Made by a program: the position numbers and the translations under genes | From: Octopus sinensis | Taxonomy: Eukaryota | Length of the DNA stretch: 64,000 bases | NCBI RefSeq assembly: GCF_006345805.1 | Contig: NC_043022.1 | Span: 7,626,001-7,690,000 of the forward strand | Reading direction: 5' to 3' | Part shown: in pieces, positions 2,756-40,605 of the stretch | How the letters are laid out: every line of letters begins with the position of its first letter | Position numbering within the stretch: the stretch's first letter is position 1 | Notes under the pieces: generated by a model | Told to the model about the DNA's origin: nothing | The model's database searches: none | Seen by the model: the letters and a program-made list of their open reading frames with translations, nothing else

Positions 2756-2860
2756 GTGACCATAACTTCTGCCGTAACCCAGGCAACGAAGAAGACAGGC
2801 CTTGGTGTTTTACAACCAATGAAAATGTCAGGAAGGAAATCTGTGACATACGTAACTGTG
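2756..2860 (+). CDS. ror: ROR exon: C-terminal half of kringle A, which lies upstream of the Ig domain
   Basis: ttcacag acceptor and gtatgt donor, 105 nt, phase 1-1. Encodes (G)[34 protein letters not shown] with kringle motifs NxCRNP and PWC. Confidence 0.85.
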
Positions 2861-38800: not shown

Positions 38801-40605
38801 GAATTAATCATTATCTCATAGCTTTGAGATTTCAGTGATATGATTGTTTAATTTTAGAAGGCCATAACTTTGTTACCTTAACTTATTCTTATTTCTTATC
38901 AAATTCTTATCTCGAACAATCTTGTCTCCATATCTTAACTCCTCTTTCTTATCTAATTGCAGGCCCACATGGTATTACTGAAGATGTGAACAAGCTGATG
39001 TTCATCCTCGTCCCAGGAATCACTGTCCCTTTAGCTCTCGTTCTTCTGTTAGCACTGGTATGTTTCTGTCAGCGATCCCACAACCGATACCAAGGAACTA
39101 GCGATAAGGCATCACAGCGTCAAGGTCAACCGATGGAACTAAGCCCTTTAGCAGCGAAATCGAACATGAGAACCAGGGAATTTTTCATGCAAAACATACG
39201 TTTCATCCAGGAACTAGGTGAAGGAGCGTTTGGCAAAGTTTATAAAGGCGAACTGGTTGGATTGTTCAGTGAAAACTCGGTCACAAAAGTTGCGATTAAA
39301 ACCCTGAAAGAGAACGCGTCTCCGAAAGTTCAAAACGATTTCCGAAGAGAAGTGGATTTGATGTCGGAGATGCGGCACTCGAACATAGTCTGCCTGCTGG
39401 GTGTGTGCATGAAACAGGAGCCGATGTGCATGTTGTTTGAATACATGAGTCAAGGTGACCTGCACGAGTATTTGATCACGCATTCGCCACATTCGGACAT
39501 AACAGGAATCGATGAAGAAGGAAACCGGGTCTTAGACTACTTGGATATGCTGCATATAGCAATCCAAATTGCTTCAGGAATGGAATACCTTTCGAATCAT
39601 CATTTTGTTCACCGAGATTTGGCAGCAAGAAATATCCTCGTCGGAGATGCACTCACCGTGAAGATCTCCGACTTTGGTCTTTCGCGAGACATTTATTCAT
39701 CTGATTACTACCGCGTCCAGAGCAAATCTCTGCTTCCAGTCCGCTGGATGCCTCCGGAATCAATCCTCTATGGGAAATTTACTACTGAGAGTGACGTATG
39801 GTCATTTGGTGTTGTTCTGTGGGAAATATTCAGTTATGGCCTCCAGCCTTACTATGGATATTCAAATCAGGAAGTTATCGATATGATTCGCTCACGACAG
39901 ATACTACGTTGTCCGGAAAACTGCAACGCACACATTTATGCCTTGAAAGTAGAATGTTGGCATGAACTTCCATCTCGCCGTCCATCTTTCAGAGAAATTA
40001 ATGCTCGTCTGCGTGCCATAAAAATGGAAGCAATGAACCAAAACCCTCACTGGAGTATATCACAGAGTCAGTCAGCTCATTCAAGCAGCACGCACCAAAG
40101 TTCCCACAGCCAACCCAGTCATCAGAGCAGCGTGGGCCCAAGCAATACCACGGCCACAACCGGCCTAACAAGCTCCAGCAACAATTCTGAGCCAAACCAG
40201 CAACAGGGGAGTAACCCACCAGTGCCTATGGCCAATCAGATGATGCCCCCTCACGGCTACGTGCCCAACCAGATGCCGCTGACTCCGACGCCAACACAGC
40301 AGATCATGATGATGCAGCAGCAACAGCAGCAACAGAGGGCGCCGCCTACGTACGGGGGCCAGCAGATGAAGGTCTCACCAGCCGGATCTGTTGCGAGCCA
40401 CCCGTCGTCGGCGAACAGTTCGTCATCGCAAGGATCAAGCACAAGCCATGGTATGACGCAGATGGCGCCCCCGTCAGTCACCGGATATGTGGGGAACAAT
40501 CTGTCGGCGCCGCCCAACATGATGGGCTCCGACTGCCACAAAATGGCTAACTATATCACACATCAAGCTCACATTCCCGACTCAAAACCTGCAGCGGAGA
40601 TCTAA
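2756..40605 (+). CDS. ror: ROR-family receptor tyrosine kinase, 5'-partial, 13 exons: 2756-2860, 6655-6832, 9474-9580, 11074-11109, 14298-14352, 19455-19573, 22087-22296, 24193-24288, 25205-25348, 26402-26506, 35487-35630, 37079-37183, 38963-40605
   Basis: All junctions are GT-AG and splice phases chain without a stop (total 3047 nt = 2 + 1015 codons). Ig + Frizzled CRD + kringle + TM + tyrosine kinase with the YSSDYY activation loop is the ROR signature. The CRD text aligns with remembered human ROR1 ([25 protein letters not shown]). Confidence 0.93.
2896..3042. repeat. Inverted repeat, ~60-bp arms
   Basis: gctagagagaacagttaaattccaaaccactat...agggaatga pairs with tcattccct...atagtggtttggaatttaactgttctctctagc. 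Confidence 0.9.
3124..3945 (+). mobile_element. Non-autonomous Helitron/Helentron-like element. Related copies: 5505-5890, 27565-27935, 56161-56646, 56647-57150
   Basis: Shared 5' end tactagcag..cccggcgttgc(c/t)cgggt and 3' end acagaca..ca(g)ttttatatata. No TIR or TSD, inserted in TA runs. The superfamily call is by resemblance only. Confidence 0.55.
4710..4840. repeat. (CT)n microsatellite
   Basis: About 65 CT units. Confidence 0.97.
6278..6559. repeat. Foldback inverted repeat, ~130-bp arms
   Basis: agggacacaataagaataagtg..cataggaaaagcagatgcaaagtcgtg..gtagcaagcctcaacacacgtg and its reverse complement. Confidence 0.9.
6655..6832 (+). CDS. ror: ROR exon: Ig domain, first part
   Basis: taacag/gtaaga, 178 nt, phase 1-2. 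Encodes [45 protein letters not shown]..., with the I-set Cys and Trp. Confidence 0.92.
7625..7960 (+). mobile_element. tRNA-derived SINE family D. Also 30236-30572(-), 49345-50090(+), partial at 8157-8290 and 15070-15210
   Basis: tggctcagtggttagagc...gagctcgaatccc head, a CORE-like gttcttgagcaagacacttt block, and a 3' ctgctggtcttccataaacaacc segment. Confidence 0.75.
8418..8853 (-). mobile_element. SINE family B with internal (TA)/(TG) microsatellite. Also ~17205-17600, 22325-22716, 26712-27141, 29220-29880, 36590-37003, 62180-62540 (-); 28162-28548, 30069-30815, 60423-61000, 63463-63860 (+)
   Basis: ggcgcaggagtggctgtgtggtaag...gggttcagtccc head, ccttgggcaagtgtcttc (CORE-like) and an (aaagagt)n tail. 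Confidence 0.85.
9063..9281. mobile_element. TTAA-flanked MITE (piggyBac-type ends). Related copies at 11406-11628 and 37300-37890
   Basis: TTAA|ccctttag...ctaaaggg|TTAA. Confidence 0.8.
9474..9580 (+). CDS. ror: ROR exon: Ig domain, second part
   Basis: ctctag/gtaaat, 107 nt, phase 2-1. Encodes [36 protein letters not shown] (DSGxF/YxC motif). Confidence 0.92.
11074..11109 (+). CDS. ror: ROR linker microexon, 36 nt
   Basis: ttttcactttccag/gtaagt, phase 1-1, in frame: [12 protein letters not shown]. There is no domain homology, so support is splice sites and frame only. Confidence 0.6.
11182..11401. mobile_element. Second TTAA-flanked MITE family. Related copies at 34672-35060 and 37896-38784
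   Basis: TTAA|ccctttc...gaaaggg|TTAA. Confidence 0.8.
11840..12730 (+). mobile_element. Degenerate Penelope-like retroelement 3' part (RT thumb remnant plus GIY-YIG endonuclease)
   Basis: Frame at 12419-12550 reads [43 protein letters not shown], followed by ...[17 protein letters not shown]. Stops and frameshifts are present. Confidence 0.8.
13059..13825. repeat. ~333-bp tandem duplication (2 copies plus a partial third)
   Basis: aaccaatcattaaaatagatttaa starts at 13059 and 13392; tttacccacaagaccattgagacaac occurs three times. Confidence 0.8.
14298..14352 (+). CDS. ror: ROR linker exon, 55 nt
   Basis: ttcacag/gtaagt, phase 1-2: [19 protein letters not shown]. It supplies exactly the phase shift needed to join the Ig exon (ends phase 1) to the CRD exon (starts phase 2). 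Confidence 0.8.
15595..17199 (-). mobile_element. Full-length (1605 bp) Tc1-like DNA transposon, IR/DR type, with a disrupted transposase at 16836-15821
   Basis: TA|CAGTGGGGAG...CCCCCACTG|TA with ~203-bp TIRs. Paired-like HTH (MTKSKELS..), [14 protein letters not shown] and [11 protein letters not shown], giving DD34E after frameshift correction. Confidence 0.95.
17904..19440. repeat. 41/38-bp almost G-free satellite, ~37 units
   Basis: Unit ctcattatcatttcatcatctcattatcatcttattatcac; next copy at +41. Confidence 0.95.
19455..19573 (+). CDS. ror: ROR exon: CRD/Frizzled domain part 1
   Basis: tttcccag/gtaagt, 119 nt, phase 2-1: [39 protein letters not shown] (C..Y.G..C..F motif). Confidence 0.9.
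19685..19918. repeat. Inverted repeat, ~105-bp arms
   Basis: cacaaaaaccgttagattcacttcaacatt..gctttgagacc pairs with ggtctcaaagc..aatgttgaagtgaatctaacagtttttgtg. Confidence 0.85.
20215..20790 (-). mobile_element. RTE-type LINE C-terminal fragment with an internal duplication
   Basis: [11 protein letters not shown]...[18 protein letters not shown] resembles RTE ORF C-termini. 20310-20420 is repeated at 20510-20610. Confidence 0.7.
21107..21619. mobile_element. TA-flanked MITE (Tc1/mariner-pogo-like). Second copy 35742-36481 has a ~170-bp internal duplication
   Basis: TA|ccgtaaatcctcgagtata...tatac..gaggatttacgg|TA. Confidence 0.85.
22087..22296 (+). CDS. ror: ROR exon: CRD part 2
   Basis: tcttccag/gtatag, 210 nt: [70 protein letters not shown]. 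Confidence 0.93.
22766..23385 (+). mobile_element. Two tandem copies of tRNA-derived SINE family C; third copy at 25520-25820
   Basis: ggaggcacatggcctagtggttagagcagcggactc...gggttcgaatc head (A/B boxes) and a shared ~290-bp body. Confidence 0.85.
24193..24288 (+). CDS. ror: ROR exon: CRD part 3
   Basis: atttcag/gtacgt, 96 nt: [32 protein letters not shown], comparable to ROR LPNCEDLP..EAANCIRIG. Confidence 0.92.
25205..25348 (+). CDS. ror: ROR exon: kringle B, first half
   Basis: cattatag/gtaagt, 144 nt (an in-frame alternative AG would start at 25211): [48 protein letters not shown]. Confidence 0.92.
26402..26506 (+). CDS. ror: ROR exon: kringle B, second half
   Basis: ttcttag/gtaaga, 105 nt: [35 protein letters not shown]. 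Confidence 0.93.
27244..27563. repeat. AT-rich foldback with a palindromic centre
   Basis: cagtgatagacataaaccaatacataaat pairs with atttatgtattggtttatgtctatcactg; centre ataatataagtaaa|tttacttatattat. Confidence 0.8.
31100..32060. repeat. (TA/TATG)n tract with a ~361-bp tandem duplication
   Basis: The unique anchor tattggtgccccagcatggccgcggccttcgggctaaaacatttttaagg occurs at ~31296 and ~31657. Confidence 0.9.
32863..33228. mobile_element. Foldback MITE-like element, ~120-bp TIRs
   Basis: tagaaatagcagttaaatactattcctctac..aagatatctcccag pairs with ctgggagatatctt..gtagaggaatagtatttaactgctatttcta. Confidence 0.8.
35487..35630 (+). CDS. ror: ROR exon: kringle C, first half
   Basis: cttctag/gtaagt, 144 nt: [48 protein letters not shown]. 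It is not in the ORF track and was read directly. Confidence 0.9.
37079..37183 (+). CDS. ror: ROR exon: kringle C, second half
   Basis: ttgcag/gtaagt, 105 nt: [35 protein letters not shown]. The final Cys codon is split T|GC with the next exon. Confidence 0.92.
37335..37650 (-). mobile_element. SINE family E. Also 57531-57790 and 59933-60120
   Basis: Shared gaacagcctgctcgtgaaattaacgtgcaagtggctgagcactccacagacacg body and a CORE-like gtgtcttgctcaagg. Confidence 0.75.
37896..38784. mobile_element. TTAA MITE expanded into five ~168-bp tandem units, nested in another MITE
   Basis: TTAA at 37892-37895 and 38785-38788. Units start at 37940, 38105, 38273, 38441 and 38609. Confidence 0.9.
38963..40605 (+). 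CDS. ror: ROR terminal exon: TM helix, tyrosine kinase and Ser/Thr/Pro/Gln-rich tail
   Basis: attgcag acceptor. [27 protein letters not shown], then [33 protein letters not shown]; stop TAA at 40603-40605. Confidence 0.96.

What the first reader, a model, noticed from the sequence alone, without database searches (positions are those of the whole stretch)
2756..40605. ROR receptor with a non-canonical ectodomain: three kringles, one N-terminal to the Ig domain
Seen in sequence: three 105-nt kringle second-half exons (2756, 26402, 37079) and two 144-nt first-half exons (25205, 35487), all phase 1-1. They give the order Kr(A)-Ig-linker-CRD-Kr(B)-Kr(C)-TM-TK in one open spliced frame. Established: bilaterian RORs (human ROR1/2, C. 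elegans CAM-1, Aplysia Ror) have at most Ig-CRD-one kringle. No TM/kinase exon or obvious signal-peptide exon lies between 2860 and 6655, so Kr(A) most simply splices into the Ig exon. Hand counts over 35 aa give A/B 23, A/C 20 and B/C 19 identities, so these are old duplications rather than assembly duplicates. Inference: exon shuffling of phase-1 modules, possibly a whole (Ig-CRD-Kr) cassette duplicated upstream, would give a receptor with two Wnt-binding CRDs.
Basis: partly seen in the sequence, partly recalled or inferred. Interest (0 to 1): 0.88.

Follow-up and report, generated by a model that had tools for sequence, protein, structure and literature searches.

The report
Octopus ROR receptor with three kringles
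The window holds most of the single ROR (Wnt co-receptor tyrosine kinase) gene of Octopus sinensis, which really does encode three kringle modules instead of one; the layout is shared with cuttlefish and already sits, undescribed, in public gene models, so it is a real but modest lineage-specific variant of a well-known receptor.

Summary
Observation confirmed. With eight other exons they give one open frame that equals RefSeq XP_029651506.1 (Octopus sinensis "ROR1") residue for residue.

The missing first half of Kr(A) is a 138-nt phase 1-1 exon 6.7 kb upstream of the window. Full-length models from O. vulgaris and Argonauta read signal peptide, about 40 residues, KrA, Ig, linker, CRD, KrB, KrC, TM, kinase. 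RNA-seq contigs of the cuttlefish Sepia esculenta carry the KrA>Ig junction and both KrB and KrC in one mRNA.

Each kringle forms its own octopod+cuttlefish clade. Each has a lower dN than the Ig and CRD. So the triplication predates the coleoid split and is under constraint.

Its premise that RORs never exceed one kringle is too strong: a Ptychodera model has Ig-CRD-Kr twice and an Oscarella protein has CRD-Kr-Kr.

Among about 170 ROR clusters surveyed, only cephalopods have three kringles. I found no paper describing this. Verdict: a new variant of a known kind, of moderate-low interest.

The parts
2756..2860 (+). Kringle A, second-half exon ([35 protein letters not shown]), 105 nt, phase 1-1. 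Its first half is outside the window, 6650-6787 bases upstream of the window start.
6655..6832 (+). Ig (I-set) domain exon 1, 178 nt, phase 1 to 2
9474..9580 (+). Ig domain exon 2, 107 nt, phase 2 to 1
11074..11109 (+). Linker exon 1 ([12 protein letters not shown]), 36 nt, phase 1-1
14298..14352 (+). Linker exon 2 ([19 protein letters not shown]), 55 nt, phase 1 to 2
19455..19573 (+). Frizzled-type CRD exon 1, 119 nt, phase 2 to 1
22087..22296 (+). CRD exon 2, 210 nt, phase 1-1
24193..24288 (+). CRD exon 3, 96 nt, phase 1-1
25205..25348 (+). Kringle B, first-half exon, 144 nt, phase 1-1. A second in-phase AG lies 6 nt downstream (25209-25210).
26402..26506 (+). Kringle B, second-half exon, 105 nt, phase 1-1. 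KrB is the kringle in the canonical position next to the CRD.
32505..32537 (+). Optional 33-nt micro-exon ([10 protein letters not shown]) between KrB and KrC, phase 1-1, AG/GT, built of ACAG/ACAC low-complexity DNA. Present in RefSeq isoform X1 only.
35487..35630 (+). Kringle C, first-half exon, 144 nt, phase 1-1
37079..37183 (+). Kringle C, second-half exon, 105 nt, phase 1-1. It is shifted by one codon relative to A2/B2, so its last Cys codon is split by the intron.
38963..40605 (+). Last exon: juxtamembrane stalk, TM helix, tyrosine-kinase domain ([27 protein letters not shown] all present), Ser/Thr/Pro/Gln-rich tail, stop codon

Best explanation
The window carries exons 5-17 of the only ROR-family gene of Octopus sinensis, on the + strand.

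Shown: the receptor reads signal peptide, short acidic leader, KrA, Ig, linker, Frizzled-type CRD, KrB, KrC, TM helix, tyrosine kinase, S/T/P-rich tail.

Inferred: the two extra kringles arose by intragenic duplication of the two-exon kringle cassette. Both exons are phase 1-1, so a copy can be inserted without breaking the frame. One copy landed in tandem (KrB/KrC). The other was placed between the leader exons and the Ig exon, which is also phase 1 at its 5' end.

Shown: this happened before octopods and cuttlefish diverged, and all three copies have since been kept under purifying selection.

Inferred from what is established for ROR2 (10.1101/2021.07.26.453829): the protein works as a Wnt5-type co-receptor through its CRD. 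KrB keeps the canonical role of packing against and stabilising the CRD. KrC lengthens the stalk between the CRD-Kr unit and the membrane. KrA adds a protein-binding module at the flexible N-terminal tip. The kinase keeps all catalytic motifs, so the database name 'inactive' is only a transferred label.
For: - Exon chain and identity to XP_029651506.1/XP_029651505.1 and to O. vulgaris CAI9741306.1.
- Domains: Pfam gives Kringle x3, I-set, Fz and PK_Tyr. CRD+KrB aligns over the whole ROR2 CRD-Kr structure 9fse, E 8e-74 by sequence and top Foldseek hit at E 2.3e-24.
- KrA is ROR-type. Its best single-kringle PDB match is the ROR2 kringle at 92 bits. By BLAST, ROR kringles score about 100 bits against 72 bits for plasminogen kringles.
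- N-terminus: a signal peptide and about 40 residues lead straight into KrA in O. vulgaris and Argonauta.
- Transcript evidence: two independent Sepia esculenta RNA-seq contigs encode KrA-Ig-CRD-KrB-KrC-TM-TK in one ORF (species from PMC9538352). All 20 near-full-length cephalopod sequences have three kringles.
- Age: KrA, KrB and KrC each form an octopod+Sepia clade, UFboot 100/100/99.
- Constraint: octopus-Sepia dN is 0.077, 0.126 and 0.109 for KrA, KrB and KrC, against 0.178 for Ig and 0.142 for CRD.
- KrB is canonical. It has the highest identity to single ROR kringles (57% against 52.5% for KrC and 51% for KrA), and MAFFT aligns the single kringles of other species to it.
- Single locus: the genome has only one ROR-type CRD.
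Against: - No octopus RNA-seq junction reads could be examined here. Transcript proof comes from cuttlefish, and for octopus from gene models whose supporting reads I could not see.
- The origin of KrA and KrC by duplication inside the cephalopod lineage rests on taxon distribution. The deep nodes of the kringle tree are unresolved (support below 50), and Nautilus was not found.
- Some transcripts and models start with 'MWY(R/Q)LPWQ...' and have no signal peptide. This is unexplained.
- The functions proposed for KrA and KrC are inference only. The AlphaFold model has pTM 0.40 and pLDDT 57-73 for KrC, so it says nothing about domain packing.
Confidence: 0.85

Rival explanations
1. KrA is a relic of an ancestral doubled cassette (Ig-CRD-Kr)x2, as seen in the hemichordate Ptychodera flava. 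It would have lost its Ig and CRD in cephalopods and been lost whole elsewhere.
For: The Ptychodera ROR1-like model has (Ig)-CRD-Kr-Ig-CRD-Kr and sea urchins have Ig-CRD-Ig-CRD-Kr. The deep kringle tree is unresolved, so it does not exclude an old KrA.
Against: No gastropod, bivalve, chiton, brachiopod, annelid or nemertean ROR retrieved has an N-terminal kringle. No Ig or CRD remnant lies between the signal peptide and KrA. There is no second ROR-type CRD in the genome. KrA does not group with the Ptychodera N-terminal kringle and is 46% identical to it, against 51% to KrB. The idea needs many independent losses.
Confidence: 0.06
2. KrB and KrC (or KrA) are alternative cassette exons, so the main protein still has a canonical single membrane-proximal kringle.
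For: All these exons are phase 1-1, so skipping any kringle keeps the frame. One O. bimaculoides UniProt isoform (A0A0L8IFF5) lacks the KrC second half. An optional 33-nt micro-exon shows that splicing varies in this interval.
Against: Two Sepia RNA-seq contigs and all 20 near-full-length cephalopod sequences carry all three kringles in one ORF. The single isoform lacking KrC2 would leave half a kringle with unpaired cysteines, which looks like a model artefact. Each kringle is individually conserved.
Confidence: 0.05
3. Artefact: KrA belongs to a separate upstream gene, or the extra kringles are assembly duplications that gene predictors stitched together.
For: The 5' end of the gene is broken in this assembly. 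One leader exon sits on unplaced scaffold C11240, and the RefSeq O. sinensis models are 5'-truncated.
Against: The same chain is found in mRNA contigs of a different order of cephalopods and in four other genomes' models. The copies are only 45-51% identical to each other. No TM or kinase exon follows KrA.
Confidence: 0.02

Closest known systems
Canonical ROR receptors (human ROR1/ROR2, Aplysia Ror, C. elegans CAM-1; other molluscan RORs such as Pomacea, Haliotis, Lottia)
   Same: Orthologous by best hits. It has the same Ig-CRD-Kr core, a single TM helix, a ROR-type kinase with YxxDYY, an S/T/P-rich tail and one large last exon. CRD+KrB aligns end to end with the human ROR2 CRD-Kr crystal structure 9fse.
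   Different: It has two extra kringles: one at the N-terminus ahead of the Ig domain, and one between the canonical kringle and the membrane. Unlike human ROR1, all kinase catalytic motifs are intact (sequence).
Ambulacrarian and sponge ROR-family models with enlarged ectodomains (Ptychodera flava XP_070563655.1; Strongylocentrotus and Diadema ROR1; Oscarella pearsei EP00118_P008321)
   Same: They show that module number in the ROR ectodomain is not fixed. Ptychodera has two kringles, one of them N-terminal to the Ig domain. Oscarella has CRD-Kr-Kr.
   Different: There, whole Ig-CRD(-Kr) units are repeated (Ptychodera, urchins), or no Ig is present (Oscarella). None has three kringles or the Kr-Ig-CRD-Kr-Kr order. 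The cephalopod has only one CRD. These are predicted proteins that I did not verify against transcripts, except Oscarella, which is a transcriptome ORF.
NRK / MuSK-type kringle RTKs
   Same: Kringle plus TM plus a related class-II tyrosine kinase. The octopus genome has such a gene at C8:86240329-86249631 with the NRK-type 'GQGAFG' loop (motif from PMC2772990).
   Different: The window's kinase is only 50% identical to that paralogue. It has 'GEGAFG', a ROR-type CRD, and ROR best hits throughout.
Multi-kringle secreted proteins (plasminogen, HGF, apolipoprotein(a))
   Same: Tandem kringles generated by duplication of symmetrical phase-1 modules. Tandem KrB-KrC aligns with angiostatin and HGF NK2 two-kringle units.
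   Different: Those are secreted protease-family proteins. KrA, KrB and KrC are each closer to ROR kringles (about 100-112 bits) than to plasminogen kringles (72-82 bits).

Membership tests
ROR receptor tyrosine kinases | Extracellular Frizzled-type cysteine-rich domain | tested here: met
   Pfam Fz scores 35.0 bits (cut-off 32.1) on the protein whose sequence from KrA2 onward equals the window translation. It aligns with the ROR2 CRD in 9fse.
ROR receptor tyrosine kinases | Kringle domain directly C-terminal to the CRD | tested here: met
   KrB (25205-25348 plus 26402-26506). CRD+KrB covers 9fse residues 4-228.
ROR receptor tyrosine kinases | Ig domain N-terminal to the CRD (present in most RORs, absent in some insects) | tested here: met
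   Pfam I-set, E 3.3e-19; exons 6655-6832 and 9474-9580.
ROR receptor tyrosine kinases | Single TM helix followed by a ROR-type tyrosine kinase with YxxDYY and an S/T/P-rich tail | tested here: met
   PK_Tyr_Ser-Thr at 328 bits. The sequence shows [33 protein letters not shown] and the tail. The kinase best hits are RORs.
ROR receptor tyrosine kinases | Orthology: reciprocal closeness to named RORs, single locus | tested here: met
   All of the top 120 hits are RORs. There is one ROR-type CRD locus in the genome. The next kinase paralogue is 50% identical and NRK-like.
ROR receptor tyrosine kinases | Canonical ectodomain with exactly one kringle | tested here: not met
   Three Pfam Kringle stretches. 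Three kringle signatures in all 20 near-full-length cephalopod sequences.
ROR receptor tyrosine kinases | Acts as a Wnt5-type (co)receptor | not testable with these tools
   Inferred from orthology and from the ROR2 work in 10.1101/2021.07.26.453829.
Kringle domain (PF00051) | About 80 residues with six cysteines in the 1-6, 2-4, 3-5 pattern and the [FY]C[RH][NS]...[WY]C signature | tested here: met
   KrA, KrB and KrC each have six Cys and the signature. In the model, single kringles superpose on ROR1/ROR2 kringles at TM 0.89-0.96.
Kringle domain (PF00051) | Lysine-binding pocket, as in plasminogen K1/K4 | not tested
   Only noted from memory that the Trp after the conserved Arg ('VRWEYC' in plasminogen K4) is Lys/Lys/Glu here ('VRKEIC', 'VKKERC', 'VVKEEC'). 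No structural test was made.
NRK / MuSK-type RTKs | NRK-type glycine loop 'GQGAFG' and NRK-clade kinase | tested here: not met
   The window has 'GEGAFG'. The NRK-like gene is elsewhere, on C8.

The most novel reading that the evidence does not exclude
The two extra kringles, fixed in the coleoid ancestor and kept more conserved than the Wnt-related CRD for the whole octopus-cuttlefish divergence, give cephalopod ROR a binding partner or ligand that canonical RORs lack. KrA at the tip would act as a new recognition module. That would make this a functionally distinct receptor subtype tied to coleoid neural or morphogenetic innovation.
Probability: 0.12. Interest if true: 0.55.

Novelty: new variant of a known kind. 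Interest (0 to 1): 0.33.

Why it matters
ROR receptors are central to non-canonical Wnt5 signalling in morphogenesis and neural wiring. What their kringle domain does is still unclear. In vertebrate ROR2 the CRD alone is sufficient for signalling, and the kringle mainly stabilises it (10.1101/2021.07.26.453829).

A lineage that has kept three kringles, each under constraint, since before octopods and cuttlefish split offers a natural experiment on kringle function. It is also a clean textbook case of phase-1 exon-cassette duplication inside a receptor gene.

It does not change what a ROR is. The sequences are already public, and other phyla also vary the ectodomain.

Tried and rejected
1. I looked for a second Ig or CRD upstream. 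tblastn over the 40 kb upstream found only the KrA first half and a 15-residue leader exon. A genome-wide search with the CRD found only this locus. Rejected.
2. I looked for the signal-peptide exons. One leader exon is on unplaced scaffold C11240. Exon 1 was not found. In O. vulgaris the gene spans 224 kb, so exon 1 probably lies far upstream.
3. dN/dS between octopus and Sepia: dS is saturated (undefined or above 1.7), so only dN and identity per domain are usable.
4. Kringle phylogeny to date the duplications: the three cephalopod clades are solid, but deeper nodes have support below 50.
5. Nautilus or other taxa with a KrA orthologue: a region-restricted search returned only the two coleoid clusters plus plasminogens. 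The unnamed Logan/JGI RORs are arthropod, fish, echinoderm or caenogastropod-like, apart from P0040, an unplaced lophotrochozoan-like ROR; none is close to the cephalopods.
6. Octopus transcript contigs: none are on record or accessible.
7. AlphaFold2 of the Sepia ectodomain: the domains fold (Ig and CRD at or above 90, KrB 88-97, KrA about 80, KrC about 60), but pTM is 0.40, so the inter-domain arrangement is not interpretable.
8. Literature: no paper holds kringle+ROR+cephalopod, and the three with kringle+ROR+octopus appear irrelevant by title and abstract (two were listed).

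
Full report
WHERE THE WINDOW IS. The window is G000:C26:7626001-7690000 of a 2.72-Gb genome. The contig length of 25,544,736 bases equals that of the record carrying XP_029651505.1 and XP_029651506.1 of Octopus sinensis. The spliced translation of the window is identical to those proteins. So this is the O. sinensis gene that RefSeq names 'inactive tyrosine-protein kinase transmembrane receptor ROR1'.

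THE OBSERVATION. I read each claimed exon. All five kringle half-exons sit at the stated coordinates with AG..GT borders. They are 105 or 144 nt long and begin and end in phase 1.

Inspection of the splice sites and comparison with orthologues added two small linker exons.

The complete in-window chain is 2756-2860, 6655-6832, 9474-9580, 11074-11109, 14298-14352, 19455-19573, 22087-22296, 24193-24288, 25205-25348, 26402-26506, 35487-35630, 37079-37183 and 38963-40605. It translates without a stop. It equals XP_029651506.1 from 'GDHNFC' to the C-terminus, 1015 of 1015 residues. Adding a 33-nt micro-exon at 32505-32537 gives isoform X1.

THE N-TERMINUS. The first half of KrA lies outside the window, at C26:7619213-7619350. 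It is 138 nt and phase 1-1. A 15-residue leader exon lies about 19.3 kb upstream of the window. Another leader exon sits on the unplaced scaffold C11240. This explains why the O. sinensis RefSeq proteins start at a methionine inside KrA.

Full-length models from O. vulgaris (CAI9741306.1, identical to the window wherever they overlap) and from Argonauta start with a signal peptide. About 40 residues follow, and then KrA. There is no second Ig or CRD. A genome-wide search with the CRD finds only this locus.

IS THE CHAIN REALLY TRANSCRIBED? The second-best database cluster (83% identity) consists of Logan RNA-seq contigs. Two independent contigs of 4.5 and 4.0 kb encode one 1083-residue ORF with KrA-Ig-CRD-KrB-KrC-TM-kinase. 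Run SRR19578114 is juvenile Sepia esculenta RNA-seq (PMC9538352).

At the KrA first-half boundary the contig has no AG where the octopus intron ends, so it is spliced there rather than intron-retaining. All 20 near-full-length cephalopod sequences have three kringles. I could not reach octopus reads themselves. For octopus the evidence is gene models plus conservation.

WHAT THE DOMAINS ARE. Pfam calls Kringle three times (212.9 bits in all), plus I-set, Fz and PK_Tyr. CRD+KrB aligns over the whole human ROR2 CRD-Kr crystal structure 9fse. That structure is also the top structural match of an AlphaFold2 model of the Sepia ectodomain.

KrA is a ROR-type kringle. Its best single-kringle PDB match is the ROR2 kringle. 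ROR kringles outscore plasminogen kringles for all three copies.

KrB is the most canonical copy. It is 57% identical on average to the single kringles of other lophotrochozoan RORs, against 52.5% for KrC and 51% for KrA. It is also the copy to which MAFFT aligns the single kringles of other species.

The kinase has [21 protein letters not shown] and YSSDYY. Nothing in the sequence suggests an inactive kinase.

AGE AND CONSTRAINT. In a maximum-likelihood tree of 52 ROR kringles, KrA, KrB and KrC each form a clade that holds Octopus, Argonauta and two cuttlefish-cluster sequences, with UFboot 100, 100 and 99. Deeper branches are unresolved. The three copies therefore existed before octopods and decapodiforms split.

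Between octopus and Sepia, dS is saturated. dN is 0.077 for KrA, 0.126 for KrB and 0.109 for KrC, lower than 0.178 for the Ig domain and 0.142 for the CRD. KrA is the best-conserved ectodomain module at 87% identity.

HOW UNUSUAL IS IT? Among the 120 best ROR clusters (90% identity level), only the two cephalopod clusters have three kringles. One other, Ptychodera flava, has two, arranged (Ig)-CRD-Kr-Ig-CRD-Kr. Sea urchins have Ig-CRD-Ig-CRD-Kr and amphioxus has Ig-Ig-CRD-Kr-Ig.

An all-against-library search at the 50% representative level gave 52 kinase+kringle proteins. Of these, 51 have one kringle and one has two: the sponge Oscarella pearsei, with Fz-Kr-Kr-TK.

All other molluscs retrieved have one kringle. 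So the architecture is not standard in molluscs, but the premise that RORs are fixed at Ig-CRD-Kr is too strong. A 2009 survey already called the ROR ectodomain variable outside CRD-Kr (PMC2772990). I found no paper that mentions the cephalopod arrangement.

MECHANISM. Shown: the exon structure and its phase symmetry, the transcript layout, and the conservation.

Inferred: the two extra kringles came from duplication of the two-exon phase-1 kringle cassette, once in tandem and once into the phase-1 intron ahead of the Ig exon. This happened in the lineage leading to coleoids. Parsimony over taxa supports it; the tree neither supports nor contradicts it.

Inferred from ROR2 work: the CRD is the signalling-relevant module. 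The kringle packs on it and is needed for good secretion, and kringles in general are protein-protein interfaces (10.1101/2021.07.26.453829). On that basis KrB keeps the CRD-supporting role, KrC extends the stalk, and KrA offers an extra binding surface at the tip. None of this could be tested here. The predicted model has pTM 0.40, which says nothing about packing.

VERDICT. This is a real feature, correctly read by the first stage. It is a lineage-specific domain-architecture variant of a well-known receptor. It is already present, unremarked, in RefSeq and UniProt models. It is of some use to people who study ROR kringle function or cephalopod gene evolution. It is not a surprise of kind.

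Noticed in passing
window 32505-32537: Optional 33-nt phase 1-1 micro-exon ([10 protein letters not shown]) between KrB and KrC, made of ACAG/ACAC low-complexity DNA. It is included in RefSeq isoform X1 of O. sinensis and in O. bimaculoides models. It is absent from the Sepia transcripts and from the O. vulgaris and Argonauta models.
   Followed up: partly
window 25203-25211: Tandem acceptors 'tatAG|ttacAG|' 6 nt apart, both in phase. Using the downstream one would delete Val-Thr just before KrB. All models use 25205.
   Followed up: no
L025 (G000:C11240:10311-10403) and upstream of the window: One leader exon of this gene (SSEDVWRTKRSYSSYDNSEISEYV) is on an unplaced 26-kb scaffold. The gene's 5' end is therefore broken in this assembly, and the RefSeq O. 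sinensis proteins are 5'-truncated. In O. vulgaris the gene spans 224 kb.
   Followed up: partly
P0126 / P0125 residues ~28-40 (leader between signal peptide and KrA): The leader contains R-T-K-R, a furin-type dibasic motif, followed by acidic Tyr-rich stretches (SSYDNSE, ERDYHSSEE). It is conserved between Octopus and Argonauta. It might be a processing or tyrosine-sulfation site. Not tested.
   Followed up: no
L009/L010 5' ends; P0124, P0135, P0137, P0138: The cluster that includes Sepia esculenta contigs (other species not identified) and the O. vulgaris models show several alternative first exons. One isoform starts 'MWY(R/Q)LPWQ...' with no hydrophobic signal sequence and a 5' UTR full of in-frame stops. 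How such a type-I receptor would be inserted into the membrane is unexplained.
   Followed up: partly
G000:C8:86240329-86249631 (L013, L030): A second kringle RTK gene: a single-exon kringle, and 8 kb downstream one exon with TM plus kinase. The kinase is 50% identical to the ROR kinase and has the NRK-type 'GQGAFG' loop. It is probably the octopus NRK/MuSK-like gene.
   Followed up: partly
P0016 (Ptychodera flava), P0055/P0049 (sea urchins), P0023 (amphioxus), P0233 (Oscarella pearsei): ROR-family models with non-canonical ectodomains: (Ig)-CRD-Kr-Ig-CRD-Kr, Ig-CRD-Ig-CRD-Kr, Ig-Ig-CRD-Kr-Ig and Fz-Kr-Kr. These models were not checked against transcripts.
   Followed up: partly
window 38963-40605: The database name 'inactive ... 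ROR1' is a transferred label. The kinase keeps [21 protein letters not shown] and YSSDYY.
   Followed up: partly
window 2600-2740; 6905-7371; 24565-24933; 47789-48886: Interspersed-repeat copies. The repeat at 2600-2740, just upstream of the KrA2 exon, has at least 40 copies genome-wide at 84-94% identity. A repeat unit with a recurring core motif forms near-tandem pairs at 6905-7371 and 24565-24933, and an 11-copy 101-bp tandem array at 47789-48886.
   Followed up: partly
window 12209-12547 (+): ORF with a weak GIY-YIG nuclease match (21.2 bits, just under the 22.6 cut-off) inside the Ig-CRD intron. It is possibly a remnant of a GIY-YIG-bearing mobile element.
   Followed up: partly
window 17883-19339 and 61526-62050: A 1.4-kb array of a 41-bp (11-bp sub-period) AT-rich repeat ends about 115 bp before the first CRD exon. 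A 525-bp (GCGT)n array lies downstream of the gene.
   Followed up: no
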